NCBI GenBank assembly: GCA_013115145.1
Contig: JAAPAO010000042.1
Location: 1-64,000 of the forward strand
DNA length: 64,000 nt
From: Perkinsus chesapeaki ATCC PRA-425
Lineage: Eukaryota > Protista > Perkinsozoa
Direction: 5' to 3'
The translations under genes were made by a program, and so were the position numbers. How positions within the stretch are numbered: position 1 is the stretch's first letter; every line of letters starts with the position of its first letter. The notes beneath the pieces were generated by a model. That model did not search any database. It was not told where the DNA came from and saw only the letters and a program-made list of their open reading frames with translations. This document shows, piece after piece, positions 766 to 41,916 of this stretch.

Positions 766-1011
766 ATGTTTATTTCTACGTTACGCTTTATCATCTACTT
801 GGAGGTATTTAATATTATTGCTCTCGGTACGAGCCCCCTCCCATTATTCGATCATGAGAGCACTCCTGCTACCCGTGTACTCAACAAGCAGTCTAACTGC
901 GACATGTGCGAATTCTGCACCAGTGGAGGTGCGATTGTCGTAGCGGCGGTTTGTCTTGCACATATGGCTAGATGTAGCACAAAAGGTAAAGTATGTGGGA
1001 AGTGCTGCTAG
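766..1011 (+). CDS. Small secreted cysteine-rich prepropeptide (81 aa, family member 1)
   Basis: ATG at 766 within the 607..1011 ORF. Hydrophobic N-terminus MFISTLRFIIYLEVFNIIALG, then RVLNKQ-SNCDMCEFC...C...C...CGKCC-stop (8 Cys). The same layout occurs at 30968-31204 and 41680-41916. Confidence 0.7.
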   Translation: MFISTLRFIIYLEVFNIIALGTSPLPLFDHESTPATRVLNKQSNCDMCEFCTSGGAIVVAAVCLAHMARCSTKGKVCGKCC

Positions 1012-1358
1012 TACCCGGTATAATGCCTAGCATAGTCGGTAAGATATTACCAGCTTATCCAGCCAAGGTTGCTTTGTCCTCTTAGCATCGCCCAGTGCAC
1101 AAGACTTCACTGACAGCCAGGTCTGCCGGTTCTCCTTAGCGATGAGGAACCTCATGTACGGAATCTCTTCATTCTCATGCTCGGAGTTACAATAGATTAT
1201 TGCAAATAGTCATTGGAAATCCAACTTTTTTATCGGATTATTCTCGAGACTTCAAGGGTATTGCGTTGACAGGGTGTTTGAAAGCGGTATCGGATTTTGC
1301 GGAAACTTTCCGCAGATAGAAATTTCCGTGTTTGAAGCCATTATCGAACTTACCTGTT

Positions 1359-1863
1359 ACGGTGTATCAGATATTGGGGTTCTGACGTTAGATCAATTTT
1401 CTGCTAAAATTAAAGAGGGAAGGTAGCTTGCTCTACGGAGTGGGCCTGGAGTCTCTTTTCGATAAAATAATTCCCACCTCGGCGCTCCCCAAGAGTCCCG
1501 GGTCTCCAAAATTTGAGCTCCAAGCTGATAGAGTCCGTTTCGTACGGAGCGAGTCGTAGCGACGGAGCGTTATGATACACCATCGGCTCGATGGCATCTC
1601 TGGCCATAATCCCTGAGTGCACTTATCTGTGATGAATGTTCTCCCTGACTGCTGATTGAAGACTTTAATGTCGTAATAGCGCGGAGACCAGTCTCCTCTT
1701 TCCATGTCCACGTGACTGATAGGCGACTGTCTACGCCAAACTTTCGCTTTTAAACATAGTAGTGTAACACAACTTGTGTTGGAAGAGTGTTCACCCTCGC
1801 TGTGCAATACCTGTCCCTTCGCAGTACTCCTATTTAGGTTGTTACATTCTCTGGAGATCTACC
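1359..1863 (+). pseudogene. 5' fragment of a second methylisocitrate lyase copy (part of exon 2, intron 2, start of exon 3)
   Basis: Inverted paralogue of about 6178-6665. It encodes GVSDIGVLTLDQFSAKIKE, then an intron homologue with a lost GT donor, then VVTFSGDL, and ends at a palindromic junction. Confidence 0.85.
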
Positions 1864-2153
1864 TGGACCAGGTAACCTGGTAGACCTCCAGGGAATGGTA
1901 GACTTTACTATTTTCATGTGACGTGGATACGGGATTTAGATCAGGGGCTTATTTCAAAAGTCTCTTAAAAGAAGCATTCGTAAGCTTCTTAATGGTGAAA
2001 CGGTCAGATTTAGTTCCAGTATGTGCATAATGCATGCCAGGCTGGCAGTCCACGGATGAACGAGACTAGTTTTGGGGGACAGTTTCCTAGCTGGAGCATG
2101 AAGGCTGAATAGCCAAGACCACTTTCTTCTGGCTGGTGACTACTGCTACCAGT

Positions 2154-2573
2154 TCATGGTCGATCAGCAAAAATGAAAAACCTCCTAGGGCGTCCGAAGC
2201 CACGAAGCTTACGTACAATATCAGAGCTGCTGTCGGTCAAAAGTGACAGCCGGGACGGGCTGGAATCCAGCGAAGTCTTCAAAGGCGTTTCGCTGAGCCT
2301 TTTCTGGAGCGTCATGTCAACCTTCTTAATCAGAGCTCTGTGATTTGCCTTCTCTCGTCGGGATAGAAATCGGAGCGTAATAGTTATGATAATTGCTAAC
2401 GTCGCAACCAACAGCCAGATGCTTTCTTGGTCATTCGCGCATTCCGGAGATGTTTCTGTTCGAAGGCGCCAAACTTCATTCTGTGTTGCTTCAAACCTGC
2501 CCTTCCAGTATTCAACTTCGTCGTGTGCTGCTCTGCACAATCCCAGTATGTCTGCTATCGATGATGAATACAT
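2154..2573 (-). CDS. Hypothetical protein: short coiled coil plus one transmembrane helix
   Basis: 139-aa ATG-initiated ORF with AHDEVEYWKGRFEATQNEVWRLR followed by the hydrophobic IWLLVATLAIIITITLRFL. No family recognised. Confidence 0.4.
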   Translation of the reverse strand: MYSSSIADILGLCRAAHDEVEYWKGRFEATQNEVWRLRTETSPECANDQESIWLLVATLAIIITITLRFLSRREKANHRALIKKVDMTLQKRLSETPLKTSLDSSPSRLSLLTDSSSDIVRKLRGFGRPRRFFIFADRP

Positions 2574-3120
2574 GGCGAGGTTATTCGTAACAGTTCAACT
2601 GAAAGCTTACAAGTCGAGTCGGAGCTGTGTGCAGCAAGTTCAATTGCAGTCGAATGATGAAACCTCTCCATCGTGGAGACTCCACGGGGCTCATTTGCGA
2701 AAGTGTATTCAGCTTGCATTTAATTTGACTTCGAAGTTAAACATGACCATTCATGCCCAGGGTGGAATAGGGACCGTTACAAGCAGACTGAAACCGGCGT
2801 ACAAAACGGTGAGTAATGGCCTAGTTTGTCGAATGCTCACAAATTCTACATGTAAATTTAAAACCTACATTTATATTATAAGGCCTCTGACTCAGGTGAC
2901 CTGAGGCATAGGAGGATAAGAGAGGCTTAAAGGCAACTAACACCTTGAGATTTAGTCCCTGGAAATGAGCAGGGGCACCATCGGGCATTTGACTTTGCAA
3001 AGATTTCCCTAGCAGTCCGCTAGCCTCGTATATTTGGTCTCATTAACACTGGAACGCTTAATCTTGCTTAGGCCCATCGTGAAAATATATTAGAAGATCC
3101 TTCCATATAAAATCGCTACA

Positions 3121-3478
3121 TCATGCGCTCGGATGAACCCATTCCGTGCCAGGCTTGTATCTGTTCATAGCACATCTCAAACGACGACACAAAGCATCAC
3201 GTGCGCAGATTATGAAGTGACCGCGTTCGCCGCTTTAGGCAGCAGCATCGGCTGCCGCCCTGGCTCGATGAACTTTAGCAACCATCTCTTCTGTGGTGAC
3301 CAGAGTCTTCCCGTCCTACACAACTGAAGGGTTCGAATACTCTGGGTCTGCTGTTGTTCACCAAATGCCCGCATCTTTTGGGAAACTCCTGATCTTCAAT
3401 ATGAAGACCAGCAGCACCGGCAGCGATGTATTCTCTAACTGTTTTAGAGACCATCTCTTCTGAGCCAAAGCCCGTATT
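3121..3478 (-). pseudogene. Middle and 3' fragment of a methylisocitrate lyase copy with an internal deletion
   Basis: About 3175-3478 is a direct paralogue of about 5865-6160 (NTGFG...KRCGHL, intron, DGKTLVTTEEMV...ICA). It then jumps to the last exon (3121-3163, matching 5164-5206); exons 5-8 are missing. Confidence 0.85.
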
Positions 3479-5163
3479 CGCTGCTCTATCGTGTGCTTGG
3501 TATACACTGTGCTCACAACTGTCGTGAGCCTAAAGAAATAACGATGGTCTTCATTGTACTACAGTAGTGAAGACCATTCATTATAGATACATCTCGGTTG
3601 TGTCCTATATTGCTCCATCGGCGCAATCCTTGCTCTTGTGGCTTCGGTCACCGCCCAGACTGAAGGCTCGGTGATGGTGGTTGAGGAGTTGCAAGTCACT
3701 GTGATGTTTATTACAGTTATTTTCGGCTAACGTGCTAAAATTCAGAGTCTTCAGCCAAGGTCAGGATAGATCCCGTTCAAGTGCCACGGAAGCTGTGGGG
3801 GGGCATTACCAAAAACCCATCGGTAATTGCACCTTAGTCGGCAAGATTATTTACGATTGTCTTTGTTACGATGGGGATTACCCATTCTCAGCGGTTGTAA
3901 TGTCGCCCAGGGCGACTCGCCCTTCCGAAAGCGTTGTTACAGTAGTCATATTGAGATGGTGACAAGTTGGTCGGTGTTATGTGCGTGCCGTCATGCAGCA
4001 AGGGGCCCTGCCCCCCGTACGAATCAAGGAACACGAGCTGTTTCAGAAGAACTTGCTGCCTGCCGTGTCTCCGAGTGAGTGGGAAGATTAGAACATATTC
4101 GCGGTATGGCACTTCCCGCTCTTTAATGAACACCAATGAGAGGTTCATCAGTATTTAGGATGCAGCGTTATGTATATTGTAACAGCAGTATACTGCTTAA
4201 GGTCAGTGCAAGCTACCACAGACAGTACTCCTGTAAGCTGTAATATCTTGCACTATGCCTCAGTGTTTACATTGCTATACTTGACATAATTTCTTTCACA
4301 ATCCTAAATTATTATGTATCCAATAACCTATGGCCGACGGCTATATTTGTGTGATGAGCATGTCTCGCATTATTGCCTCATTGTGGTATTATGAACCGCA
4401 GCCCGGCTGCGGCAGCCGTGTTATATAAGATTGCACTCCAGTGCTTCCACTGAATGATTGCCTCTCAGGCTCTGATTGTATGGAGTGTTTCCGTACAAGT
4501 TTCGACGATATTTGCCTCTATCCGACACACGAAAGAGTTCCTAACAGGCGCAAGCAGCTTGCGGCTCGAAACGGCCAAGCATTACGCCGACTTATTTCAA
4601 TGTTCGCCTATATAAGTCTTTGTTGTCATACCGATCATTGAGAACCTCAAGAAGTAGTCTCAATCATCGTGCTTTCGTTAGTTTATTAATATTATACAAG
4701 TAACATAGAAATGTTTGGGATGAGTAGAGTGAGGTACTCATGTCTCAACGTCTACTGTCATAGGAGCTCTGCAGTGCGCGATAACGCGCAATGAGTCAAG
4801 TGCTTTGCGCCGCCCAATAACAAATTACACCTCGCGTAGTTTCTGCTTTTCATTGCGTGCATTGCTGCAGTGCACGCGATGTGGGTGCATCTCTACAGCT
4901 AACCAACGACGTACTGTAAGGACCTCCCTATAGAGGGTTCCGATGAAAAATCTGCAACGAGGACACAAAGTGGAATCGAGAAGAAAAAGCTCCAAGTATC
5001 CGAGTTCGATGATCTTTTTCTTCCGATGATCGCCCGCTGAATGGTGTTACCTCATTAACTGTTAATGATTAACATTAGAACACTGCGCTCGATCATGGTT
5101 TGAACCGCCGTGGAATTTAAAACAAACAATTTAAAAATTCAAGATAATATCGGTACGATCCAA

Positions 5164-6881
5164 TCATGCGTTCGGATAAACCCATTCCGTGCCAGGCTTG
5201 TATCTGCTGGACGGTTGAACCACAAAGCCCTCGAACACAGCCTCACCTCAGCAAGTCGTAGAGTTCCTTTCGAGACTGCATGTTCTCCTCATGGGACTTC
5301 AATCCTTGTTCTGCTTTCAGATGACTGAGGCAATCGTCAGCAGCCTTCATTGCGCATCTTAGGGTCGAGACAGGATAAATAACACAGTCGTAACTACAAC
5401 AATACTAGCCCGGACAACTAGTGAGCATAACCTACCCGGCAGCAGCGAAATCGTCCAGTTTAATTGGGTCCGTCTTGCCGAACTCGGTCATGTTTGCCAA
5501 CATGAAGGGACCCCCTCGTGAAGACAAGTTCACTGGTCCGATTTTCTGCATGTGTTCGGCAAACCTGGTCAGCTGACATGTGTGAGAGCAAACAATGAAG
5601 AAAATTCTTAGAAGCATTTTCATTTCCAATGATTTCGACGCGGAGTTCAACAATTGAGCTAGGTATCCTCTTACATTTTGAACTCTTCTATTGTCTTAAG
5701 TCCTTCCGGGAATATCATATCTGCACCAGCTTCGACGTACTGCTCACAAAGATTGTGGTGGACAAGTCTTAAAATCCTCGTACCTTCTTGGCCCGATCGA
5801 TGGCTTCTTCGATACCGTGCGTGCTATAGGCATCTGTACCTGCAAGATGGTGAGATATTTATCCAAACGATGATACAAAGCATCACGTGCGCAGATTATG
5901 AAGTGACCGCTTTCGCCGTTGTAGGCAGCATCGGCTGCCGCCCTGGCTCGATGAACTTTAGCAACCATCTCTTCTGTGGTGACCAGAGTCTTCCCGTCCT
6001 ACACAACTGAAGGGTTCGAATACTCTGGGTCTGCTGTTGTTCACCAAATGCCCGCATCTTTTGGGAAACTCCTGATCTTCAATGTGAAGACCAGCAGCAC
6101 CGGCAGCGATGTATTCTCTAACTGTTTTAGAGACCATCTCTTCTGAGCCAAAGCCCGTATCCGCATCACATAGGAATGGTAGACCTCCAGAGAATGTAAC
6201 AACCTAAATACAAGTACTGCGAAGGGACAGGTATTGCACAGCGAAGGTGAATACTCGACCAACACAAGTTGTGTTGCACAACTGTGCTAAGGAGCGCAGC
6301 TTGGCTTAGATTGTCGCCTATCAGCAGTCACGTGGACATGGGAAGACGAGACTGGCCTCCGCGCTATTATGATAGTGAAGTCTTCAATCAGCAATCAGGG
6401 GAAGCCCTTATCGCAATATAAGTAGACTCAGTTTAATAGGTAGTGCAACAAGTGCAGTAATAATGCTCCGTCGCTCGGACTCGCTCCGTGGACTCTATCA
6501 GCTTGAACCTCAAGTTCCGGAGACACGGGACTCTTGGCGAACGCCAAGGTGCAAATCATTTTATCGAAGAGAGACTTCAGGCACACTCCGTAGACCTTGT
6601 CATCTTACCTCTTTAATCTTAGCAGTGAATTGATCCAACGTCAGAAGCCCAATATCAGGTACGCCGCTAGCTGCCGACAGTGCTCCACCAGAGACATACC
6701 CACCAAGGAATCCATGAACGGGAAGCATTCTGAGAATATATGGCCATCGGAGCTATGTCTCAATTACTCACCTCGCCACAAGACCATTGAATGCACCAGG
6801 TAGCTGCACACATTGTGACCTCATCAGCGTACGGAGCCTCCTACCAGCGCTGTTCAATGCCGAGGTGGGTGTTAGACACAT
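5164..6881 (-). CDS. prpB: 2-methylisocitrate lyase (PrpB-like, ICL/PEP mutase superfamily), 9 exons
   Basis: Manual splicing at GT-AG sites keeps frame from ATG 6881 to TGA 5164. Motifs: SAGRRLR..LPGAFNG, GVPDIG, LPFLCDADTGFG, HIEDQEFPKRCGHL, ARTDA, AGADMIFPEG, LANMTEFGKT, MQSRKELYDLL. Confidence 0.92.
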
Positions 6882-17792: not shown

Positions 17793-18427
17793 TAATTGCT
17801 GCTAGATGACGAGCTATTTGCGGATTACGGCGTCATGTATTGGCTCGGATGGAGAATGACCAATCCTGATGTGACGCCGGTCAGGATATCTACATGGATT
17901 TGACTTTCACTTCTCAATTCAGCTTCTTTGTCGAGTTGAAAAGTGTTAATTCACATTCTCGTGGTGAGGGCCTCCCTCAGCTAATGAAAAGAAGTACGAT
18001 ACATCGCGCTTTGAGCCTTGGAACGTTTGTGGCACACTTCGGCTGCTCGTACCACACCCTGATCGAAAGCACGTTCTACGCACATCTCGACTGCGCGTTA
18101 AACTGAGTTGACTGAGTTATTATAACCCCAGACGAGAAGTTCATTGATCGTGCGCCGCATGACAAACAATTTCCTGTTTTTAATTAAAGCTTCTAAGTTG
18201 GAAGTTAACGATAGCTCGGGTATCGGACATTGTACAACTGCGCTAAGAGAAACGGGAGACTAAAACGTCGGGTTGAACCCACCAGGTTAGGCACGGCGAG
18301 GAATCCAAAAACTCTTCGCTGAGACGGGGTACTCTTAGAAGGTCATGTTACATGACTAAATGGGTCATGTACATGAGCCAGACTCATCACGAGTCGCACA
18401 TGTAAATCAAAGATACAACACGCTGGA

Positions 18428-18999
18428 GATGCACTTCTGTTATAGCGAGCGCGGCGATGCACTTCTGTTATACCGAGCGCGGCGATGCACTTCTGTTATA
18501 CCGAGCGCGGCGATGCACTTCTGTTATAGCGAGCGCGGCGATGCACTTCTGTTATAGCGAGCGCGGCGATGCACNNNNNNNNNNNNNNNNNNNNNNNNNN
18601 NNNNNNNNNNNNNNNNNNNNNNNNNNNNNNNNNNNNNNNNNNNNNNNNNNNNNNNNNNNNNNNNNNNNNNNNNNCGAGCGCGGCGATGCACTTCTGTTAT
18701 AGCGAGCGCGGCGATGCACTTCTGTTATAGCGAGCGCGGCGATGCACTTCTGTTATAGCGAGCGCGGCGATGCACTTCTGTTATAGCGAGCGCGGCGATG
18801 CACTTCTGTTATAGCGAGCGCGGCGATGCACTTCTGTTATAGCGAGCGCGGCGATGCACTTCTGTTATAGCGAGCGCGGCGATGCACTTCTGTTATAGCG
18901 AGCGCGGCGATGCACTTCTGTTATAGCGAGCGCGGCGATGCACTTCTGTTATAGCGAGCGCGGCGATGCACTTCTGTTATAGCGAGCGCGGCGATGCAC
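18428..18999. repeat. Tandem satellite, 28-bp unit CGAGCGCGGCGATGCACTTCTGTTATAG
   Basis: Head-to-tail, almost identical copies on both sides of the N gap; two left-hand copies carry TATAC instead of TATAG. There are no spacers. Confidence 0.97.
18575..18674. other. Assembly gap (100 N) inside the satellite
   Basis: A run of exactly 100 N, typical of a gap of unknown size. Confidence 0.97.
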
Positions 19000-19039
19000 G
19001 GATTGCAGACTATGCATTTCTCACCTGCCATACGCAAAT

Positions 19040-19810
19040 CGTCATACAGTAATACTGTAACAGTATGACGTTTGGTTAATATCATATTATTAGTATGACT
19101 AATACTAATACTATGATATTAACCAATGGATTCTCAGTTCTCTAACACTCTCCGTTCAGTTATAAACGATTGGCTCCGAGGATTATCCAATATCAGATGA
19201 AGTTCATCTCTACTTGGACAAGCAACAGTCGGAATAGACGGTTGATTAGTGCAACTACCAAGTTATCACTGATCAGATAACATCGTTATCATAACAAATC
19301 AATAGTTGATTATTATCTAGTTGAACTGATAATGAAAAGTCAAGGATTTCTTCGGGGTATAATACCCCGGGTATTGCCCAGGGATGCGGATAGCCGCAGT
19401 CTCGGTGCCCAGAGTCTGGGCCCCAGACTAAACAGTCCACCGCGCGCCGTGCCATGGCAGCCATGGTGGCACCATGTCCCGTACGGGTGTTACACCCGGG
19501 GTGTATCTCACTTCGAGTGATAAAAAACGAGTAGTTACTACCCAGTAGTGTGGCAATGTGGCAGCCACATACAGTATATAACATCTTTCTGTTGTGTACG
19601 TGTAGATTCGCCTCCTTGTGTGAGGTTGCGTGTAGACTCTACACTGAAGAGCCAAAATGCATCATCACTATGAGTAAGTGCATGAAAGTTTCATCATGAA
19701 ACGATTTGGAATTCATGACATGCCGTTATTAGTCGTTTTTTTCTGGCATTAACTTAATGCCATTAAGATAGCAAGCTACAGGACACTAGCACATCGGATG
19801 CGCCGCATCC
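19040..19810. repeat. Cluster of chained short palindromes
   Basis: 1-nt-spacer palindromes at 19353-19369, 19361-19375, 19413-19429, 19462-19476, 19484-19498, 19491-19505, 19556-19570, 19688-19702, 19744-19762, 19753-19767 and 19796-19810. An imperfect 25-bp-arm hairpin lies at 19072-19126. Confidence 0.85.
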
Positions 19811-20213: not shown

Positions 20214-21341
20214 CTAGATTTTCTTCTTGGCGAATGCAATAGATCCAATCTCATAACTGAATTGGACGAAATGGCCTCTGAATAGCGGAGCACCAATGAC
20301 CCAAGTGAAAGGGAGTGCTGTGTCGAAATCACCCCCTCTGATAAGGAGTCTACATACGTCTGGGCGATCCAAATGGGCTCGGATATAGTCCTTCCCTTCA
20401 ATGAATAGCCTTGTGATAAGTTCTTCTTCATCATCGGCTTTAATGTCGAACCAGATCTCTGGTAGCTTGCTAATGTCTGAGCACTTCACCATTCTCTGGT
20501 CAGCAATATGAACAAACTTGCTTATATACTCCAACAACTTGTTGACTTCCTTGACGGGACCCCAAATGCCGCTAGCACCTGAATCAAAAACGACGCGGGC
20601 CTTTTTGATGTGCAGGGCTTCTGACTCCGTTCCAGACCGATAACCAGCTTCATCAAGATTCAGAATCCAGCCTTGATCATCCCTTTGATGGAGTGTTATA
20701 AATGGTGAATGCCAACTAGGATCAGGATTTCCACCAACCGTCAAATGCCCGATATCAGTGGACGTCCTTGGATAGGTTATCGAGAATGTCAATCTGCGTA
20801 TGGCTCCATGCAAGCCTCGAACCAGCTGATGAATGAAGGAGTAGAGCTCACGAGAAAATCCCGGTGCTTTTTGTAGTGATAGAACTGGGAAAGGAACCCT
20901 GTTACTCGGAGTATATTGCTTCACTACACTAAGACGATAGTCCGAAGCAGTAACCGTAGTTCCGTTCGGGAGCTTCACAGCAAGAGATGCAGTATGAGGG
21001 AAGAACGTAAAAGTAGACCCATCTACGAAGTGAGTAGTGTCGTTCTCTTTACTGCTCTCCGCACACGAATCACCAGGACAAGAATAACAACCAGAGGTGA
21101 AGAACTTGCATCTCTGTGGACCAAATGCATCTTCATAGAGAACATACGTATATCTTCCACCGGTATCGGGTATAACTTGGACAGTCTGACCATCGAACAC
21201 AAGCTCGACCCAGCCATTATATCCAATCAAATTGATGGGAAAGTCAATAGTCCATGGCGGGAGTGCAGCTGAGCAAAAGTTCATAGGCAGAATGGTATGT
21301 TGTAGGTAAAATAATATGGGAGCTGCTAGATGACGGATCAT
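20214..21341 (-). CDS. Secreted pepsin-like (A1) aspartic protease, intronless, 375 aa
   Basis: Catalytic motifs IPDTGG and VFDSGAS, late WVIGAPLF motif, hydrophobic N-terminus. ATG at 21341; the track start uses TTG. Confidence 0.9.
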   Translation of the reverse strand: MIRHLAAPILFYLQHTILPMNFCSAALPPWTIDFPINLIGYNGWVELVFDGQTVQVIPDTGGRYTYVLYEDAFGPQRCKFFTSGCYSCPGDSCAESSKENDTTHFVDGSTFTFFPHTASLAVKLPNGTTVTASDYRLSVVKQYTPSNRVPFPVLSLQKAPGFSRELYSFIHQLVRGLHGAIRRLTFSITYPRTSTDIGHLTVGGNPDPSWHSPFITLHQRDDQGWILNLDEAGYRSGTESEALHIKKARVVFDSGASGIWGPVKEVNKLLEYISKFVHIADQRMVKCSDISKLPEIWFDIKADDEEELITRLFIEGKDYIRAHLDRPDVCRLLIRGGDFDTALPFTWVIGAPLFRGHFVQFSYEIGSIAFAKKKI

Positions 21342-29972: not shown

Positions 29973-30043
29973 TAATGGTGATCAATCATTGATCACCATT
30001 AAAAACCACGATCATTCATTATGAATGATCGTGGTTTTTAATG
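29973..30043. repeat. Two overlapping perfect palindromes (14-bp and 23-bp arms), each with a 1-nt spacer
   Basis: 29973-29986/29988-30001 and 29997-30019/30021-30043. Confidence 0.97.
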
Positions 30044-30967: not shown

Positions 30968-31204
30968 TCAGTGACAACAAACACTACAATCTAAGTCGCA
31001 TGTGTTTCGAACTCCTCCACAAGGAATTGCCAATAGGTTCGCTTCTGGGCTGCCCCCATTGCACCAAGTACAAAAATTACAGTTACTTCTTTTGTTCAAG
31101 GCTCGTTGAGGAAGATGGGATGGACGGGCCTCAACTTGGACCATTGAATAAATGACCAATAACACAGGTAAGTAAGCCGCAAGGCGGAAGAGGAGGCTGG
31201 ACAT
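30968..31204 (-). CDS. Small secreted cysteine-rich prepropeptide (78 aa, family member 2)
   Basis: Signal MSSLLFRLAAYLPVLLVIYSMVQVEA, pro-segment RPSHLPQRALNKR, mature SNCNFCTWC...CC H with 8 Cys. A close paralogue at 41680 conserves all cysteines. Confidence 0.8.
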   Translation of the reverse strand: MSSLLFRLAAYLPVLLVIYSMVQVEARPSHLPQRALNKRSNCNFCTWCNGGSPEANLLAIPCGGVRNTCDLDCSVCCH

Positions 31205-33289: not shown

Positions 33290-33350
33290 GTCTATCCTTC
33301 TACTGTAGAAGGATAGACATGCCATACAATGTAGAAGTTCTACATTGTAT
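33290..33350. repeat. Two adjacent perfect palindromes (14-bp and 13-bp arms), 1-nt spacers
   Basis: GTCTATCCTTCTAC-T-GTAGAAGGATAGAC (33290-33318) and ATACAATGTAGAA-G-TTCTACATTGTAT (33324-33350). Confidence 0.97.
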
Positions 33351-33581
33351 ATCCTACCTTGTAATTTAAATAGTCATACTGCGGCTCTATCTTCGCTCGC
33401 TGGTAGTGACTTCCTTCTGCAAAGGGGCTCTGTACTACAAACGGGTAGGTCGGAAAATCCCTATTAGAATAGAGTGGAATACTAGCTATTTTATGTCCTA
33501 TAATGAAGGTCATTAACGCTGCGTGCACAGAAGACTTCAGTGTCTACAATTGTGTTCTAGCTAAGCGCTGATATGGCTATT

Positions 33582-33614
33582 CTCTGATTCTCTGTGTAAC
33601 ACAGAGAATCAGAG
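33582..33614. repeat. Perfect palindrome, 16-bp arms, 1-nt spacer
   Basis: CTCTGATTCTCTGTGT-A-ACACAGAGAATCAGAG. Confidence 0.97.
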
Positions 33615-34709: not shown

Positions 34710-35946
34710 CTATGTATACAACTTTGCACCATTCGGAGAGCCGGCGAATACCGACCCGTTGAAGTGACGGAGAGAAGTGCTTTGAGCGGCAGTTTTAGCA
34801 ATTCCCACTCGTCCATTATCTATTTGAAACTCGAAGTAATGCCCGATCAAAGCCGAACCGGGAAGGATCCGGTGAGGTATATCTAGCTTTACGATCCTAA
34901 TGGTGCATTTCTCGGCGTCTGGCCGCACATAATTAATATTACTCATAGTGATAGGAACTTCCCCTTTAGGTCCCAAGTTGAACATCAATTTTGGCATTGA
35001 GGTGTAGTTACTACACTGTAGTAGCTACAGGAAATTGACCATAGCTTATTTGCTGGGTTCCATACCAGGGGCTGTCGCACCGCTTGAGAGATATCTCTCA
35101 TTATGGCATCAAAATAAAGCGGTGGTACTGCAAGCGCGTCGCTTCCACTGTCGAGCAGTAGTTTCTGGTTAATACCAAGATGTAGGTGACCATCATCAAC
35201 CTGCATACTACTCAATGGTACCATATAATGTTTGGCATCGGTGAACGTCAGGTACAGTAATGGGTGCTTATAGAGGTTTGGGTCACAACCACCTAGTAGG
35301 ACTTTTCCATGATACCTGTCCTTGTTTCGCTCTCTCTTATTAAAGTAAATAGCGAAGGTTCTACTGTTTATTATTCCAGGCTTCTTATTCATCAATTAGT
35401 ACAGCAGCGGGGGGAACCCACGTTCACTTTGAGGTCCCAAACAGATTAGATTGAATACTGGGGATACATTAGGTGGAGGGTCTTGGCCAATCACAAGCTC
35501 GAACTTTACTTCACCGACGTCCACAGACCCTATCTTCGAATCATCTACATGTTCGAAGGCCGTTTCGCGTGTGCCATCGAAGAAAGTGTTAACATAAATT
35601 TCGGCATGCTGAGGATCACATTCTGTCTTGCATATATAGCAACCAGCGTACAACTTAGCACACGAAGAATCAGGGCTCATGACAGAGTCATACCATTCCT
35701 TCCAGATTAACTGGAATTGACTTGCGCCAGTATCCACCAGGGCCCATAGCCCCAGGTCCTTGAGATGACAATACGGGCTGAAGTCGGATTCATAACCAGA
35801 TATCCTTCCAAGAACCACATCAACTGACCATCTCCAACTGGCAGTCTACCCGAAATTCCAAATGTAAATGAAACAGCCCGAATGAAGTATAGCAGAGAGC
35901 GATAAATACACTTGGTTCTTTGATAGACGTTCCGATTGATAGACAT
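34710..35946 (-). pseudogene. Aspartic protease pseudogene (a different subfamily from the two intact copies)
   Basis: LVDTGAS and LLDSGSD motifs. In-frame TAA at 35396-35398; frameshifts near 35780 and 35000. Confidence 0.88.
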
Positions 35947-36062
35947 TCTCTGCTAGAGACTCAAGGCTGGAGAGCGGCGTATAATTGTTGATGAACCTCT
36001 TAATACCTGAAGTCGCTTCCAGGAAGTGATCACGAATCGTGATTCACGATGACAATGGTACC

Positions 36063-36120
36063 GTGTCACGGTGACCACGTCAGGGTGTCACAGTGACCTC
36101 GTCAAGGTGTCGCAGTGACC
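36063..36120. repeat. Degenerate 22-bp tandem repeat (~2.6 copies)
   Basis: GTGTCACGGTGACCACGTCAGG / GTGTCACAGTGACCTCGTCAAG / GTGTCGCAGTGACC. Confidence 0.8.
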
Positions 36121-37187
36121 GACAGTCGCTGACCAGGCCGATGGCATCGATCTTCTTTGAGCTCGGAAGTTTGAGGGGACCCCTTCCTTTCCCGCCATTT
36201 ACGAGGCCTAAGGCCTCAGGTCTTAGACCTGACATCCAGTGCCATAACATACGCAAGCGATGTATGATATATTGCTTGCGTATGTTGTGACACTGGTATA
36301 TATTTTGTATCTACACTGCAAGTATTTGAGCAATGAGGTAAGTTACGGTATGTACTACCGCGTAAGTGGGTTGCTTGTTCAAGGTTGACAACCGCTCGCT
36401 TGTTAAACAAGTCGCACAAGCTACAGTATCTAACATTTCGTCCGACTCGAAATGCAATAATACCACCGTATACGATTTAGTAAATCGGATTTACACAACT
36501 AGACTCCATCTTGGCATGAACAAAACGGGTAAACGTTGGGTTTGAATAGTCGATCTTAGCCCGGCCTGACAATGTAAAAAGCACAACTGAACCATGGTAG
36601 TGTATAGACTTTTGTAGACCGCGACGCCAATTGCTGCTGTTTAAAGGGTGCCTGCAAGGGTTGCTTGCATTTACATAACGTTAGGATTACTCTATTCAGA
36701 GGTCAGTCTCTTAAAATATTAATAGCAAACTGTGATGTGCTGAAGTCGCTCACTTCCCACCAAAAATGCCCTCCGATGTTGTTTCGAACGAGAACTGTCT
36801 TTGAATATTCCGAGATACTCCACATTCTCAACCAACGCGGATGAAGCCATAGCTGCTATCAGACATATTGTAGCGGGAATCATCTGCCAATAGTCGACAG
36901 CAAGGCTGCGGGGAGTCGCGTGCTAAATGGCCGTTTGACGATTACTCGTAGTAATAAACTCCATGCTGTTAAGCACTGTAGGGTAAGCCGCGCGCAAACG
37001 GTCACGATAGGTGTCACCTATCAGCCTGATAGTATCAGGTGACCTGAGTAGGACAGTTACCGACTATAAAAAGACAGCTGCAAATGAAGGCAGTACAAAG
37101 TCGTTTATTTTCTCAATCACGGACGTCAGTACTATGAAATATCAACATGCGATTGCCACAAAAAATTGCAAGGATAGTGATATTCAT

Positions 37188-38612
37188 TGTGCGCCGCCCG
37201 TTCATTGTACACGCGTACACAGTTCATTCCTCTTGCGAGAGTGAGTTAAGTGAAAGGAAGAAGATCACTGCATCTACTGTGAAAAGTAAATGGCAGTCGA
37301 CCCGTGTGCAGACACACTTTTCAAACTGGCTGGAAGGTCTCTGCATCCTCACAGTTTACTTTTGCAAGGGAAATGAACCCCATGCAGAATGGAGGAGATG
37401 CCGCACAATAAAGAGAGAGACCAAATTTGACCCTTCGATCACTGTATAAGGGGACCAATCGTTTCGATCGCTCCGGCTCGAATAGTCACATTGTGACCAA
37501 ATGTATATGCGTGATTCACGCAGCGTGAAGCCTCTGATCTCCATGTTCGAGTGATTCATCTGAGGCTGAACAGTTAAGCTGAGCTCCACGCTCATATATT
37601 CAGAGACTCACTTAGTGGGCGGCGGCCACTTAGTGGCCGTGAGTCGTCACATGATTAGTGGCTAGTGGAGCGAGAAGGGGTTGCCAGGAGAGACTTGACT
37701 CAGTGCCTCTTCTGTGGCAGAAGTTCTGCCAATTCCAGACCCATTACAATACTTCAAACATCATATATATTTACATAGCCTAACAGACAGAAGCTCATGG
37801 AGGTAGACTAGTCCACTAGTCATGCTAGACTAGCATTGCTAGTGGACTGCCGATCAGTCACTGAGCAGACCTTGCGACAGGCGTGTACTATAAGCGTTGA
37901 AGAAAGGCCAGGAAAGGTCAAGAAAGGTGATTGTAAGGCCTCTCATCTTCAAAAAGAGCAGGTATGAGTCGGACTCATTGAGTCCTGAGCTCACCGAGTA
38001 TGTCATTGATGACAACAATATAAGAAGGCGCCTCTTCCGAGGCGTTCACTTCATCAGTTAAATGACATTAGATAAGGGAACGCACGATTTCTTTCATGCA
38101 CTCACTGTCGCTATTTAATCACTATGGTAAGAGTCTTAGGTTAATAGCCAAACCTTGCATAGTTTTAAACTCTCGAAGTTGATATATGTTCGTACACGGT
38201 ACGTCACTTCGCGGGAAATCGAGCAATGTGATATATCAGAAAGGCAGCCTTTTGAAGGCTCGAGCTTTCGTTTTGTCTTTGGTTTCGCCAACGTACCAGT
38301 CATGTCCGTAAGCCGAGGAGTCATGGTTATGAAGACTCACCGAGTCCGACTCGCTTTGAACGGCTGTATAGTTCAGTCACTGAACTTCAGTGTGAACGAT
38401 GCCGAGCCGGGATTATCGACACTGCTCGTTGCCGCAAGCAAGCCGCTTGATGTAAGCGTACTGAGGCTCAACCCAACACCTCCATTCAAGAATACTGATT
38501 TGAAAGCGACTGCTTACACTCTGATAATATTGGGTGAGCAGTCCAAATACTACTTAAGGCTGCAGATAACAGCCGACAGACAACACGGGGCCCAGCTATG
38601 AGAAACTGCTCA
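37188..38612. repeat. Long direct repeat Y, copy 1 (~1.4 kb)
   Basis: Colinear with 40414-41666 from TGTGCGCCGCCC to GCTATG(A/G)GAA..GCTC, with copy-specific indels. Confidence 0.9.
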
Positions 38613-38684
38613 TGAATGCATTCCTCTAGGACACAAGAAAAAATCTCGTTGGCGAAGCAACATTATAACGGTAGCTGGTGGATG

Positions 38685-39812
38685 CTAGATTTTCTTCTTG
38701 GCGAAACCAATAGACCCAATATCATAGGTGTATTGGACGAAATGGCCTTTGAAAAGTGGATCACCGATGATCCAACGGTAAGGGGAACTTTGGTTGAAAT
38801 CAATCCCTTTGATACGAAGTCTACAGATCCCTGGACGCTTTAAAGCTCTTGTGTTGTCCTTCCCTTCAATGAATAGCCTTGTAGTAAGTCCTTCTTCATC
38901 ATCGGCTTTAATGTCGAACCAGATCTCTGGCAGCTTGCTGATGTCCGTGCAGTTCATTCTTCTCGCTCCATCAATATGAACGAGCTTGCTTATATACTCC
39001 AACAACCTGTTGACTTCTTTGACGGGTCCCCAAATGCCGCTAGACCCCGAATCGAAAAGAACGCGGGCCTTCTCGATGTGCAGGGCTTCTGACTCCGTTC
39101 CAGAGCGATAACCAGCCTCATCAATATTCAGAATCCAGCCTTGATCATCCCTTTGATGGAGTGTGACAAATGGTGAATGCCAACTAGGATCAGGATCTCC
39201 ACCTACCGTCAAATGCCCGATATCAGCGGATGTCCTTGGATAGGTTATCGAGAAGGCCAATCTGCGTATGGCTCCATCCAAGCCTCGAACCAGCTGATGG
39301 ATGAAGGAGTAGAGCTCACGAGAAAATCCCGGTGTCTTTTTCAATGATAAAACCGGAACTGGCGGGATGTAATCCGGAGTATATTGCTTCACTACACCAA
39401 GACGATAGTCCGAAACATTAACCGTCGTTCCGTTCGGGAGCTTCACAGCAAGAGATGCAGTATGAGGGAAGAACGTAAGAGTAGACCCGTCTACGTAACG
39501 AGTAGTGTCGTTCTCTTTACTGCTCTCCGCACACGAATCACCAGGACAAGAATAACAACCAGCGGTGAAGGTTTTGCATTTCTGTGGACCAAATGCATTT
39601 TCATAGAGAACATACGTCCTTCTTCCGCCGGTATCGGGTAAAACTCGGACAGTCTGACCATCGAACACCAGCTCGACCCAGAAACTGTTTCCAATCAACT
39701 TGATGGGAAAGTCAACAGTCCATGGCGGCAGAGCAGCTGAGCAAAAGTTCATAGGCAGAACAGTATGTTGTAGGTAAAATAATATAGGAGCAGCTAGATG
39801 ACGGGTGATCAT
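38685..39812 (-). CDS. Secreted pepsin-like (A1) aspartic protease, intronless, 375 aa; paralogue of 20214-21341
   Basis: LPDTGG and LFDSGSS motifs. ATG at 39812 aligns with ATG 21341 of the paralogue. Confidence 0.9.
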   Translation of the reverse strand: MITRHLAAPILFYLQHTVLPMNFCSAALPPWTVDFPIKLIGNSFWVELVFDGQTVRVLPDTGGRRTYVLYENAFGPQKCKTFTAGCYSCPGDSCAESSKENDTTRYVDGSTLTFFPHTASLAVKLPNGTTVNVSDYRLGVVKQYTPDYIPPVPVLSLKKTPGFSRELYSFIHQLVRGLDGAIRRLAFSITYPRTSADIGHLTVGGDPDPSWHSPFVTLHQRDDQGWILNIDEAGYRSGTESEALHIEKARVLFDSGSSGIWGPVKEVNRLLEYISKLVHIDGARRMNCTDISKLPEIWFDIKADDEEGLTTRLFIEGKDNTRALKRPGICRLRIKGIDFNQSSPYRWIIGDPLFKGHFVQYTYDIGSIGFAKKKI

Positions 39813-40182
39813 GGTGCTTAAAACAGGGTGGCTGAAGGAAGGAAAGATAGGAATTATTTCTTTCTTTCTTTTCTTTCCTGAAAAGAAAGATAGAGGAAAG
39901 AAATTTATACCAGCGGCCTTCGGCCGCAAGATGGAAAGGTGTCGCTTCGCCTTTGCCAGCGACAATAATTGTCGGTGACGCCGGCAGATTGACGGGGGCA
40001 ATATCATTCTACTGTATAGTAGCGCTACCGATGCTGCACCGGTCTTGTGTACTGACTCTAATGGTAGAGCCTCTACCTCCGGAAGGATGTAGAGATAGAG
40101 GTAGAGTCCACTCTCTCTTTAGCATTTATTTTTTGTTTAATGATTTATTCTCTCTCAGCCTGAGAGTCTCAGGTTCTTCCCG

Positions 40183-40385
40183 AATGAACCCCATGCAGAA
40201 TGGAGCAGATGCCGCACAATAAAGAGAGAGGCCGAATTTGACCTCTCTATTACTGTATGAGGAGACCAATCGCTTCGATCACTTCGGCTCAAATAGTCAC
40301 ATTGTCACCAAGTATATATGCGTGAAGCCTCTGATCTCCATGTTCGAGCGATTCATCTGAGGCTGAACCGTTAAGCTGAGCTAAT
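40183..40385. repeat. Extra partial copy of the Y sub-segment (also at about 37372-37587 and 40601-40797)
   Basis: GAACCCCATGCAGAATGGAGCAGATGCCGCACAATAAAGAGAGA...AAGCTGAGCT occurs three times (one base differs in the 37372 copy). Confidence 0.9.
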
Positions 40386-40413
40386 TATACTGGATCGGAT
40401 GGGTTACCCCGAT

Positions 40414-41666
40414 TGTGCGCCGCCCAACCCTTGTACACGCGTCAGCAGTTCATTCCTCTTGCGAGAGTGAGTTGAGTGAAAGCAAGAAGATCACTGCGTC
40501 TACTGTGAAAAGTAAATGGTAGTTGACCCGTGTGCAGACACAGTTTTCAAACTGGCTGGAAAGTCTCTGCATCCTCACAGCTTACTTTTGCAAGGGGAGT
40601 GAACCCCATGCAGAATGGAGCAGATGCCGCACAATAAAGAGAGAGACCAAATTTGACCCTTCGATCACTGTATAAGGGGACCAATCGTTTCGATCGCTCC
40701 GGCTCAACTAGTCACATTGTGACCAAGTATATATGCGCGAAGCCTCTGATCTCCATGTTCGAGCGATTCATCTGAGGCTGAACCGTTAAGCTGAGCTCCA
40801 CGCTCACCTTATGTGAGCCACATGATTCTGAGTCACATGCTCAGAAACTCTCTTAGTGGGTCACCCACTGTGGGTGGTGGGCACTTAGCGGCCGTGAGTC
40901 GCATGATTCACATGATTAGCAAATTAAGCAAGAAGGGATTGCCAGGAGAGACTTGCCCTAGTGCCCCTTCTGTGGCAGAAGTTCTGCCAATTCCAGACCC
41001 GTTACAATATTTCAAATATCATATATTTACATAAACAGTCTAATAGACAGAAGCTCATGAAGATGGACTAGTCCACTAGTCATGCTAGTGGACTGCCGAT
41101 CAGTCACTGAGCAGACCTTGCGACACGCGTGTACTATAAACGTTGAAGAAAGATATTGTAATGCCTTTAATTAAGGGCAGGTATGGTTCCTGAGTTCATC
41201 GAGGATGTCATTCGTTTTCGAGTTGAGGACAATACAAGAAGGCGCCTACTCCGAGGCGTTCACTTCATCAGTTAGATGATGAATGGTTGAAATGATGAAT
41301 GTCACCTGGTCACGTACCAGTCATGTCCGTAGGCTGAGGAGTCCTTATTATGAAGACTCACCGAGTCCGACTCGTTTCGAATGGCTGTATAGTTCAGTCA
41401 CTGGAATTCAGTGTGAACGATGCCGAGCCGGTATTACCGACACTGCTTGTTGCCGCAAGCAAGCCGCAAGCAAGCCGCTCGCTGCAACTTGCAGCCTGCA
41501 AGCGTACTGAGGCTCAACCCAACACCTCCATTCAAGAATACTCATTTGACAGCGACTGCTTACATTCTGATAATATTGGGTGAGCAGTCCAACAAAGTTA
41601 GTACTACTAAAGGCTGCAGATAACAGCCGACGGACTACAAAGGACCCGGCTATGGGAACCCGCTCC
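40414..41666. repeat. Long direct repeat Y, copy 2
   Basis: Colinear with 37188-38612; lacks about 38100-38290 of copy 1. Confidence 0.9.
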
Positions 41667-41679
41667 TAGTGGGGGGCAT

Positions 41680-41916
41680 TCATTTACAACAAGCACTACA
41701 ATCTACGTCGCATGTATTCCGAACTGCTCCACAAGGAATAGCAAATAGATCCGCTCCAGCACTGCCCCCATTGCACCAAGTGCAGAAACCACAGTTACTC
41801 TTGCGGCTCAAGGCTCGTTGAGGAAGATGGGAAGGACGGGCCTTAACTTGGACCATTGAATAAATGACCAATAATACAGGTAAGTAAGCCATAAGGCGGG
41901 CGAGGAGGCTGGACAT
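41680..41916 (-). CDS. Small secreted cysteine-rich prepropeptide (family member 3)
   Basis: MSSLLARLMAYLPVLLVIYSMVQVKA-RPSHLPQRALSRK-SNCGFCTWC...CSACCK. An alternative upstream ATG lies at 41925. Confidence 0.8.
   Translation of the reverse strand: MSSLLARLMAYLPVLLVIYSMVQVKARPSHLPQRALSRKSNCGFCTWCNGGSAGADLFAIPCGAVRNTCDVDCSACCK

What the first reader, a model, noticed from the sequence alone, without database searches (positions are those of the whole stretch)
766..41916. Family of secreted 8-Cys prepropeptides with a conserved RxL processing-like motif
Seen: three intronless genes (766-1011, 30968-31204, 41680-41916) share signal peptide + short pro-segment + [R-x-L-(N/S)-(K/R)-x-S-N-C-x2-C-x2-C-x11/13-C-x6-C-x3/6-C-x2-CC]. 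The divergent member 1 keeps RVLNKQSNC while members 2 and 3 have RALNKRSNC and RALSRKSNC. RxL is therefore conserved even where the dibasic pair is lost. Established: RxL motifs just after a signal peptide are export/processing signals in Plasmodium (PEXEL RxLxE/Q/D, cut by plasmepsin V), Toxoplasma (RRL, ASP5) and oomycete RxLR effectors. Inference: this may be an undescribed family of disulfide-rich effector, toxin or pheromone-like peptides. Euplotes pheromones are a loose alveolate analogy for small Cys-rich prepropeptides. I do not recognise the cysteine framework.
Basis: partly seen in the sequence, partly recalled or inferred. Interest (0 to 1): 0.85.

Follow-up and report, generated by a model that had tools for sequence, protein, structure and literature searches.

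The report
Orphan secreted eight-cysteine peptide gene family
Three small, unannotated genes in the clam parasite Perkinsus chesapeaki encode related precursors (signal peptide, short pro-piece, 39-residue eight-cysteine peptide) with no detectable relatives in any searched database. The family looks real and new, but its function and the meaning of its conserved RxL block are unproven.

Summary
Three intact ORFs share a hydrophobic N-terminus, a short pro-segment, the block R-x-L-[NS]-[KR]-x-S-N-C and a 39-residue tail with eight invariant cysteines: 766-1011 (+), 30968-31204 (-) and 41680-41916 (-). The genes are absent from the deposited gene table where it was seen (members 2 and 3). Members 2 and 3 are 87% identical in the ORF, while their flanks are no more alike than shuffled sequence. 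Member 1 is a true but distant paralogue (z = 10 against shuffles). A probable fourth, decayed copy lies beyond the window. No search found a relative: Pfam, NCBIfam, PDB sequences, Foldseek, an exhaustive HMM search of 1.84 billion representatives, or a metagenome scan. My best reading is a lineage-restricted family of secreted, four-disulfide, probably helical peptides released at the conserved block by a secretory-pathway endoprotease. The PEXEL/TEXEL/RxLR reading fails each motif definition. The block fits the subtilase (S1P) RxLx consensus, and a dibasic site fits two of three members. The assembly gap lies in a 28-nt minisatellite far from all three genes. Expression, the cleavage site and the function remain untested.

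The parts
766..1011 (+). Member 1 gene (81 codons plus stop). Predicted signal peptide 766-828, pro-segment 829-891, 39-residue eight-cysteine peptide 892-1008.
   Evidence: The signal-peptide cut was inferred by eye from hydrophobicity and the -3/-1 rule. No dedicated predictor was run.
874..900 (+). Member 1 conserved junction block R-V-L-N-K-Q-S-N-C.
30968..31204 (-). Member 2 gene (78 codons plus stop). Predicted signal peptide 31127-31204, pro-segment 31088-31126, mature peptide 30971-31087.
31079..31105 (-). Member 2 junction block R-A-L-N-K-R-S-N-C.
41680..41916 (-). Member 3 gene (78 codons plus stop). Predicted signal peptide 41839-41916, pro-segment 41800-41838, mature peptide 41683-41799. 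A further in-frame ATG lies three codons upstream.
41791..41817 (-). Member 3 junction block R-A-L-S-R-K-S-N-C.
743..752 (+). Pyrimidine-rich tract ending in CAG, 13 nt before the member 1 ATG. Candidate spliced-leader (or cis) 3' acceptor. This is inference.
   Evidence: SL trans-splicing in P. marinus and P. chesapeaki: PMC3101222.
31225..31233 (-). Acceptor-like TTGCCTCAG, 20 nt before the member 2 ATG. It lies within the only short upstream block shared with member 3.
41929..41937 (-). Acceptor-like TTGCCTTAG, 12 nt before the member 3 ATG.
20217..21284 (-). Neighbour: divergent pepsin-like (A1) aspartyl protease, copy 1, 81% identical to copy 2. Context only; no link to the peptides is shown.
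38688..39752 (-). Neighbour: the same aspartyl protease type, copy 2 (P0001). DTG and DSG motifs are present. It lies 1.9 kb from member 3.
18362..19055 (.). 28-nt minisatellite containing the assembly gap 18575-18674. Not part of any family member.

Best explanation
These are three functional, stand-alone, intronless genes of a lineage-restricted Perkinsus family. Each encodes a small secreted prepropeptide.

Proposed route:
1. An N-terminal signal peptide takes the precursor into the ER (inferred).
2. The eight invariant cysteines form four disulfides around a helix-loop-helix core (inferred from two low-to-moderate confidence models).
3. The short pro-segment is removed at the conserved junction block R-x-L-[NS]-[KR]-x / S-N-C by a secretory-pathway endoprotease. 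This releases a peptide of about 39-42 residues to the outside.

I think a subtilisin-type convertase is the likeliest enzyme (S1P-like RxLx specificity, or kexin-like at the dibasic pair). The motif fits those consensuses, and Perkinsus makes many secreted subtilases.

The peptide's target is unknown. Members 2 and 3 are neutral to acidic, so a classical cationic antimicrobial action is unlikely. A ligand or host- or parasite-directed binding role is my guess.

Shown: the ORFs, their homology, conservation confined to the ORF, and the absence of known relatives. Inferred: secretion, cleavage, fold and function.
For: - Three intact ORFs have identical architecture and a 39-residue C-terminal part in every member.
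- All eight cysteines are invariant, and each stop codon falls zero or one codon after the terminal CC.
- Members 2 and 3 are 87% identical in the ORF, while 300 nt on either side is no more alike than shuffled sequence.
- dN/dS is 0.48 overall and 0.30 in the mature part, with Fisher p about 0.04 and 0.03.
- Synonymous divergence is lower in the pre-pro part (0.13) than in the mature part (0.44). From my own knowledge, not checked here, this pattern recalls conotoxin and pheromone precursors.
- Member 1 is a significant but distant paralogue that stayed open over 81 codons. A probable fourth copy outside the window has decayed, which shows what neutrality looks like here.
- Hydrophobic N-termini: the 11-residue Kyte-Doolittle maximum is 2.6 in members 2 and 3 and 2.1 in member 1, followed by small residues at -3/-1.
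- The block is fixed relative to the first cysteine, not to the signal peptide.
- The RxLx/RxxL consensus of S1P-type subtilases is documented in PMC13082318. Abundant subtilisin-like proteases with signal peptides in Perkinsus are documented in PMC2868825.
- AlphaFold2 models of members 2 and 1 both give helices at residues 3-10 and about 18-32, with pLDDT 54 and 72.
Against: - There is no expression or peptide evidence of any kind. The exact sequences are not among about 15 billion predicted proteins, which include assemblies of public sequencing runs.
- Members 2 and 3 are not in the GenBank gene table of the contig.
- There are only three members, amounting to two independent lineages, and all lie on one contig.
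- The dN/dS evidence rests on 32 differences.
- Member 1 has a weaker signal-like region, with E and N inside the hydrophobic core, and no dibasic pair.
- No signal-peptide predictor was available.
- The structure models have low to moderate confidence and come from a three-sequence alignment.
- Gene conversion limited to the ORF could mimic part of the ORF-only conservation.
Confidence: 0.6

Rival explanations
1. The RxL is a PEXEL/TEXEL-like signal. An ER or Golgi aspartyl protease of the plasmepsin V/ASP5 type cuts after the leucine and licenses export of the peptide into or onto the host cell. The aspartyl proteases interleaved with the peptide genes on this contig might be the processing enzymes.
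For: - R and L are invariant in all three members and lie shortly after a signal-like sequence.
- Perkinsus is a myzozoan parasite related to Apicomplexa.
- Three copies of one divergent A1 protease, plus one further A1 fragment, lie among the peptide genes within about 71 kb.
Against: - The fifth position is K or R, not E/Q/D (definition in PMC8401336).
- There is no RRL.
- The neighbouring proteases match plasmepsin II, cathepsin D, renin and pepsin in the PDB. No plasmepsin V chain appears among the 50 hits at E <= 0.01.
- Paralogues of the same protease on other contigs and in P. olseni have no peptide gene within up to 10 kb, as far as each contig reached.
- The motif position is tied to the mature domain, not to the signal peptide.
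- No paper in the library links Perkinsus to such a pathway.
Confidence: 0.1
2. The ORFs are not genes. They would be chance or decaying open frames, relics of a dead family, kept alike by recent duplication or gene conversion.
For: - They are not annotated where the gene table was seen (members 2 and 3) and are not in any protein collection.
- No homologue exists elsewhere.
- One further copy is clearly decayed.
Against: - Member 1 is too diverged for recent duplication, yet it is open and keeps 8 of 8 cysteines, the junction block and the stop position.
- Similarity between members 2 and 3 ends at the ORF borders.
- dN is lower than dS.
- Short ORFs are routinely missed by eukaryotic gene callers, so a missing annotation carries little weight.
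Confidence: 0.12
3. They are self-signalling peptides analogous to Euplotes pheromones: diffusible, helical, disulfide-locked molecules used for parasite-to-parasite communication (growth, mating type or stage switching) rather than against the host.
For: - The pre / pro / mature layout and sizes are the same: 19-residue pre and 16-22-residue pro segments in Euplotes (PMC9229436), against 21-26 and 13-21 here.
- The predicted secondary structure is all-helical.
- The mature part varies more at synonymous sites than the pre-pro part.
Against: - There is no sequence or fold match to the Euplotes pheromone structures, which are in the PDB.
- These are paralogues at different loci, not alleles at one mating-type locus.
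- To my knowledge (not searched for here), mating has not been described for Perkinsus.
Confidence: 0.1
4. They are metal-binding (metallothionein-like) peptides. The CxxCxxC and CxxCC clusters would chelate Cu, Zn or Fe rather than form disulfides.
For: - Cysteines make up 20% of the mature part.
- CxxC-type spacing is typical of metal sites (sequence).
Against: - A signal-like N-terminus and pro-segment point to the oxidising secretory pathway.
- Aromatic and long hydrophobic stretches are atypical of metallothioneins.
- No Pfam metallothionein or ferredoxin hit was found.
Confidence: 0.03

Closest known systems
Euplotes pheromone precursors (pre-pro-Er/En/Ef)
   Same: An alveolate small secreted protein made as signal peptide, then a short pro-segment, then a disulfide-rich mature part. 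The secondary structure is helical. The mature region is more variable than the leader (PMC9229436).
   Different: No detectable sequence or fold similarity. The cysteine framework differs. Here the copies are dispersed paralogues, not alleles. [quoted passage not shown]
PEXEL (Plasmodium, plasmepsin V) and TEXEL (Toxoplasma, ASP5) export motifs
   Same: R-x-L shortly downstream of an ER signal sequence in a myzozoan parasite.
   Different: The fifth residue is K or R, not E/Q/D, and there is no RRL. The motif is locked to the start of a small cysteine-rich domain. No plasmepsin V-type protease was identified. The neighbouring A1 proteases are of the plasmepsin II/cathepsin D kind.
Oomycete RxLR(-dEER) effectors
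   Same: A signal peptide followed by R-x-L.
   Different: The fourth residue is N or S, not R. There is no dEER. The cargo is a 39-residue eight-cysteine peptide rather than a WY-type or other effector domain (the RxLR definition is from my own knowledge).
Subtilase (S1P/SBT6.1, SBT3.5)-processed plant peptide precursors (RALF23, GOLVEN, PROSCOOP)
   Same: Secreted peptide precursors cut at an RxLx/RxxL site immediately before the mature peptide. RALF is also cysteine-containing (PMC13082318). All three members here match RxLx.
   Different: A different kingdom, with no sequence relation. The mature peptide here has eight cysteines. Whether Perkinsus has an S1P-type enzyme was not tested.
Kexin/furin-processed small cysteine-rich secreted peptides (conotoxin precursors, fungal Kex2-processed effectors)
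   Same: The pre-pro-mature layout, a dibasic pair directly before the mature cysteine-rich part in members 2 and 3, and a leader more conserved than the mature part.
   Different: Member 1 has K-Q, not a dibasic pair. I know of no named conotoxin framework with the C-C-C-C-C-C-CC pattern (from memory, not tested). No Pfam toxin family hit was found.

Membership tests
PEXEL (Plasmodium export element) | Pentamer R-x-L-x-[E/Q/D] | tested here: not met
   The fifth residue is K, K and R in members 1, 2 and 3. Definition from PMC8401336.
PEXEL (Plasmodium export element) | Located downstream of an ER signal sequence | tested here: met
   R lies 16, 8 and 8 residues after the signal-peptide cut I predict. 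The cut itself is inferred.
PEXEL (Plasmodium export element) | Cleavage after L by plasmepsin V, with an N-acetylated new N-terminus | not testable with these tools
   Needs the native peptide N-terminus. The neighbouring A1 proteases resemble plasmepsin II/cathepsin D, not plasmepsin V.
TEXEL (Toxoplasma ASP5 substrate motif) | R-R-L | tested here: not met
   The sequences are T-R-V-L and Q-R-A-L. The motif definition is from my own knowledge.
Oomycete RxLR effectors | R-x-L-R, usually followed by dEER | tested here: not met
   The fourth residue is N, N and S. No EER follows.
S1P/subtilase-processed propeptides | RxLx or RxxL immediately upstream of the mature peptide | tested here: met
   R-V-L-N, R-A-L-N and R-A-L-S end two residues before S-N-C. 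Consensus from PMC13082318. A motif match alone does not show cleavage.
S1P/subtilase-processed propeptides | Actual cleavage by an S8 subtilase | not testable with these tools
   Perkinsus has many subtilisin-like proteases (PMC2868825), but no substrate data exist.
Kexin/furin-type proprotein convertase substrates | Dibasic K/R-K/R at P2-P1 of the pro/mature junction | tested here: inconclusive
   K-R in member 2 and R-K in member 3, but K-Q in member 1.
Euplotes pheromones | Pre-pro-mature precursor of a small secreted disulfide-rich protein | tested here: met
   Compare PMC9229436.
Euplotes pheromones | Sequence or fold homology to the solved three-helix pheromone structures | tested here: not met
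   The PDB profile search found no relevant hit. Foldseek on both models gave zero matches. The models are short and of low to moderate confidence, so this is a weak test.
Any curated protein family (Pfam-A, NCBIfam) | Score above the family threshold | tested here: not met
   No Pfam family at E <= 0.1. No meaningful NCBIfam hit at E <= 1.

The most novel reading that the evidence does not exclude
The conserved R-x-L block is the recognition site of an aspartyl-protease-dependent maturation or export step that Perkinsus shares with Apicomplexa, and the co-clustered divergent A1 proteases are its dedicated enzymes. That would place RxL-licensed effector secretion at the base of Myzozoa, and would make these eight-cysteine helical peptides the first defined exported effectors of a perkinsozoan.
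Probability: 0.06. Interest if true: 0.85.

Novelty: new variant of a known kind. Interest (0 to 1): 0.42.

Why it matters
Perkinsus species kill commercially important oysters and clams. To my knowledge almost nothing is known of their secreted effectors, and a literature search for Perkinsus secretome work found nothing on small cysteine-rich peptides.

This family shows that short secreted-peptide genes are missing from the deposited annotation of P. chesapeaki, and probably from those of its relatives. Secretome inventories built on those proteomes would therefore be incomplete.

The peptides have a cysteine framework and a predicted helical hairpin with no match in the sequence or structure libraries searched here. 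If they are expressed, they are candidates for host-interaction or cell-to-cell signalling molecules.

They would also give a natural substrate with which to learn, by observing the native N-terminus, which propeptide-processing rule operates in a lineage that sits between dinoflagellates and apicomplexans.

Tried and rejected
**Searches that found no relative**
- The word-index search of 5.8 billion proteins with member 2 found no candidate.
- The exhaustive HMM search of 1.84 billion representatives with the three-member profile gave three hits, all artefacts. They are repeat proteins matching 14-29-residue stretches several times: an LRR protein with a repeated "LSNCNMC", and a protein with a repeated "RALNLKS".
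- Exact-sequence look-ups found the peptides in neither the collection nor any called gene.
- The JGI metagenome scan matched 347 patterns, none confirmed.
- Pfam, NCBIfam and PDB sequence searches found nothing.
- Foldseek against the PDB with both models gave zero matches. The models are short and of low confidence, so this is weak evidence.

**Linkage test**
- I fetched up to 10 kb on each side of paralogues of the neighbouring aspartyl protease: three other P. chesapeaki contigs and five P. olseni loci (L001, L003-L005, L007-L010).
- Scans by tblastn, regular expression and HMM found no family member.
- I therefore rejected the idea that protease and peptide genes are obligate neighbours.

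**Weak hits set aside**
- The tblastn hit at window 6766-6819 (E about 1) was examined and judged chance.
- Inverted repeats place a possible mirror of the member 1 locus near 7.0-7.3 kb, but no peptide-like ORF is there.

**Rejected readings**
- A transposon or dispersed-repeat origin is unlikely. The 1.4-kb segment 3' of member 3 is duplicated only locally.
- The fungal-genome and hydrophobin idea I started with is ruled out by the Perkinsus identity and by the cysteine spacing.

**Not done**
No orthologue-anchored synteny search in P. olseni or P. marinus was therefore made.
- The third homologous-protein search was left unused, because the exhaustive search has no length filter and already covered it.

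Full report
**1. What is there**

Translation confirms an intact ORF at each stated place:
- 766-1011 on the + strand, 81 codons.
- 30968-31204 on the - strand, 78 codons.
- 41680-41916 on the - strand, 78 codons.

On the + strand the latter two are full of stops, so the finding omitted their strand. Each product has four parts:
- A hydrophobic N-terminus.
- A short polar segment.
- The block R-x-L-[NS]-[KR]-x-S-N-C.
- A 39-residue tail, counted from the S of S-N-C, with eight cysteines. The spacing is C-x2-C-x2-C-x13-C-x6-C-x3-C-x2-CC in members 2 and 3, and x11/x6/x6/x2 in member 1.

The stop codon follows the terminal CC directly in member 1 and after one residue in members 2 and 3.

**2. 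More than chance**

- Members 2 and 3 are 82% identical in protein and 87% in DNA.
- Member 1 is only about 33-36% identical to them, but the match is significant. tblastn gives E = 3e-5 in the six-frame window. The local alignment score is 74, against 25.8 +/- 4.8 for 2000 shuffles that keep the cysteine content, and none reached it.
- The stretch before the first cysteine is itself non-random: z = 4.6, reached by 2 of 2000 shuffles.
- A loose regular expression for the framework finds only these three ORFs in the window and in the other Perkinsus loci held at that point.

**3. The assembly gap**

The only N run is 18575-18674. It lies inside a 28-nt minisatellite, with arrays at 18428-18574 and 18675-18999 and the repeat family spanning 18362-19055. 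The repeat phase is not kept across the 100 Ns, because the 145-nt spacing leaves a remainder of 5 on division by 28. The gap length is therefore arbitrary, as warned. The gap is more than 12 kb from the nearest family member, and no reading frame of this finding crosses it. It affects only the stated distance between members 1 and 2.

**4. Whose DNA**

- The 440-codon ORF at 38688-40007 is a pepsin-like aspartyl protease.
- Its best relatives are all Perkinsus proteins, and two hits are the window's own.
- Look-ups place them on GCA_013115145.1 (Perkinsus chesapeaki), contig JAAPAO010000042.1 of 108,081 bp, with record coordinates equal to window coordinates.
- The window is therefore bases 1-64000 of that contig.
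- The gene table returned for 28685-49752 lists no gene at member 2 or member 3. The table for the member 1 region was not seen.
- The three exact sequences are absent from the 15-billion-protein collection.

**5. Are they genes?**

Several points favour function:
- *(a) Conservation ends at the ORF borders.* For members 2 and 3 the ORF is 87% identical. The 300 nt upstream and downstream align no better than shuffled sequence, about 0.6 under the same scoring.
- *(b) dN is lower than dS.* The ratio is 0.48 overall and 0.30 in the mature part. This rests on only 32 differences, with Fisher p = 0.04 and 0.03.
- *(c) Member 1 has stayed intact.* It diverged long ago yet keeps the start, all eight cysteines, the junction block, the 39-residue length and the stop position.
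- *(d) A decayed copy shows the contrast.* A probable fourth copy lies beyond the window (L006:17640-17909, about contig 70.92-71.19 kb, + strand). tblastn (E = 0.003) and a DNA profile (nhmmer E = 0.009) both find it at the same place and strand. It retains the S-N-C-x2-C start and the C-x2-CC end, but it has three premature in-frame stops, lacks two of the eight cysteine columns and has lost the R-x-L block. I left it as it stands and did not read it through.
- *(e) Acceptor-like sites precede each ATG.* A pyrimidine tract ending in YAG lies 12-20 nt before each ATG. In members 2 and 3 it is the only short upstream block they share. Perkinsus mRNAs, including those of P. chesapeaki, receive a spliced leader (PMC3101222). 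These may be SL acceptor sites, but that is inference.

Points against function:
- There is no expression or peptide evidence.
- The family is tiny.
- ORF-limited gene conversion could account for part of (a).

**6. Secretion and processing (inferred)**

- Members 2 and 3 have a classical signal-peptide outline: an n-region with R7, a 15-residue h-region with an 11-residue Kyte-Doolittle maximum of 2.6, and a c-region ending V-E-A or V-K-A.
- Member 1 is weaker, with a maximum of 2.1 and E and N inside the core.
- No dedicated signal-peptide predictor was available.
- With those cuts the pro-segments are 13, 13 and 21 residues.
- The block is fixed relative to the first cysteine but not relative to the signal-peptide cut, where R is 8, 8 and 16 residues downstream. 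That is what one expects of a pro/mature junction.

Three cleavage rules fit to different degrees:
- Kexin/furin-type at K-R or R-K fits members 2 and 3 but not K-Q in member 1.
- S1P/subtilase-type RxLx fits all three (consensus in PMC13082318).
- Aspartyl-protease type after the L of RxL fits all three, but see section 7.

Perkinsus expresses many subtilisin-like proteases with signal peptides (PMC2868825). I rank a subtilase first, without direct evidence.

**7. The PEXEL-like reading**

- PEXEL is R-x-L-x-[E/Q/D] (PMC8401336). Here the fifth residue is K, K and R.
- TEXEL needs RRL. Here the sequences are T-R-V-L and Q-R-A-L.
- RxLR needs R at the fourth position. Here it is N, N and S, and no dEER follows.
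- All three membership tests on the motif therefore fail.

One curiosity bears on this reading. The contig carries three copies of one divergent A1 protease:
- 20217-21284 (-), 38688-39752 (-), and 66908-67966 (+) beyond the window.
- They have DTG and DSG motifs.
- A different A1 fragment lies at 34985-35395.
- These genes are interleaved with the four peptide loci.

However, several results argue against a link:
- The protease's PDB relatives are plasmepsin II, cathepsin D, renin and pepsin, at E about 1e-9 and over the C-lobe only. No plasmepsin V chain is among the 50 hits.
- Its paralogues on three other P. chesapeaki contigs and in P. olseni have no peptide gene within up to 10 kb, as far as each contig reached.
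- The two gene families do not share duplication units.

I treat the interleaving as two local tandem expansions, with a small residual chance of a functional link.

**8. Relatives and fold**

No search found a relative:
- Pfam and NCBIfam.
- The PDB sequence profile, whose only hit was a signal-peptide-like match to an ion channel at E = 1.6.
- The word-index search.
- The exhaustive HMM search of 1.84 billion representatives, which gave three hits, all repeat-protein artefacts.
- The JGI metagenome scan.

A caveat applies. These libraries hold predicted proteins, and short eukaryotic ORFs are often not predicted, as this very contig shows. Absence from the P. olseni and P. marinus proteomes therefore says little. 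Whole Perkinsus genomes could not be scanned with the tools at hand.

AlphaFold2 on the mature parts gave these results:
- Member 2: pLDDT 54, with helices at 3-10, 20-32 and 34-37.
- Member 1: pLDDT 72, with helices at 3-10 and 18-30.
- This is a consistent helix-loop-helix, with the CxxCxxC on helix 1, but confidence is only low to moderate.
- Foldseek against the PDB returned nothing for either model.

**9. Function**

- The mature parts of members 2 and 3 are neutral to acidic (K+R of 1-2, D+E of 3). Member 1 is mildly basic (4 versus 2). All three have a hydrophobic centre.
- That argues against a classical cationic antimicrobial peptide.
- The layout and the predicted helical, disulfide-locked core most resemble Euplotes pheromone precursors (PMC9229436) and small secreted effector or toxin precursors in general.
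- Nothing here discriminates between host-directed and parasite-directed roles.
- Literature searches for Perkinsus cysteine-rich secreted peptides, for a Perkinsus secretome, and for Perkinsus with plasmepsin V or PEXEL found nothing relevant.

**10. Verdict**

- This is a real, unannotated, orphan family of small cysteine-rich prepropeptide genes in P. chesapeaki.
- The kind is familiar: small secreted cysteine-rich peptides with a processed pro-segment.
- The family, its cysteine framework and its junction block are new.
- The export-motif interpretation is not supported by the motif definitions and remains a low-probability possibility.
- No exon-joined models were built for neighbouring multi-exon genes, so orthologue-anchored synteny in other Perkinsus species was left out.

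Noticed in passing
L006:17640-17909 (+), about contig JAAPAO010000042.1 70916-71185, beyond the window: Probable fourth, degenerate family copy. The same strand and place were found by tblastn (E = 0.003) and nhmmer (E = 0.009). It has three premature in-frame stops, has lost two of the eight cysteine columns and has not kept the R-x-L block. It lies about 3 kb downstream of the third aspartyl protease copy. Left as it stands.
   Followed up: partly
window 20217-21284 (-), 38688-39752 (-); L006:13632-14690 (+), contig 66908-67966: Three copies (81-92% identical) of a very divergent pepsin-like aspartyl protease with DTG and DSG motifs. Only the C-lobe matches PDB pepsins and plasmepsin II (E about 1e-9). 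The deposited model of copy 2 starts at a Met without a signal peptide, but an in-frame upstream Met precedes a hydrophobic stretch.
   Followed up: partly
window 34985-35395 (-), with the adjacent ORF 35396-35818: A further A1 aspartyl protease fragment (Pfam Asp, E = 1.5e-11) of a different subtype, not found by tblastn with the P0001 type. The deposited 195-residue model next to it has no Pfam hit. It is possibly a mis-modelled or broken gene.
   Followed up: no
window 37186-38611 and 40412-41665: A segment of about 1.4 kb immediately 3' of member 3 is duplicated (78-96% identical) immediately 3' of aspartyl protease copy 2. There is an internal 201-nt triplication (37371, 40182, 40597). 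It occurs only here in the roughly 190 kb of Perkinsus DNA held. Two unrelated genes thus share a 3' flank.
   Followed up: partly
window 543-601: A near-perfect palindrome with exact 21-nt arms at 547-567 and 577-597, which appears by eye to extend to about 25 nt. It lies about 170 nt upstream of the member 1 ATG and is unique in the window. Meaning unknown.
   Followed up: partly
window 1360-1863 and 6178-6666: An inverted repeat in three blocks (83-88% complementary) enclosing about 4.3-5 kb. That interval itself contains a 99%-identical direct repeat (3242-3481 and 5925-6164). Possibly a transposon-like or rearranged segment next to member 1.
   Followed up: no
window 18362-19055: A 28-nt minisatellite (98-100% identical units) interrupted by the 100-N assembly gap. 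The repeat phase is not preserved across the gap.
   Followed up: yes
window 59446-59520 (-): tRNA-Glu (TTC), found by both ARAGORN and Rfam. It lies inside the span of a deposited 1449-residue gene model (53927-62810, +), presumably in an intron or marking a mis-modelled gene.
   Followed up: no
window 24035-24652 (-) and 10117-10888 (-): A cytochrome P450 exon (Pfam E = 5e-20) lies between protease copy 1 and member 2. DUF2921 transmembrane E3-ligase-like exons lie in a region of strong negative GC skew (10-14 kb).
   Followed up: no
window 30971-31204 compared with 41683-41916: Synonymous divergence is about three times lower in the signal and pro part (0.13) than in the mature part (0.44). 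From my own knowledge this leader-conserved, cargo-variable pattern is known from conotoxin and pheromone precursors. The counts are too small for a firm statement.
   Followed up: partly
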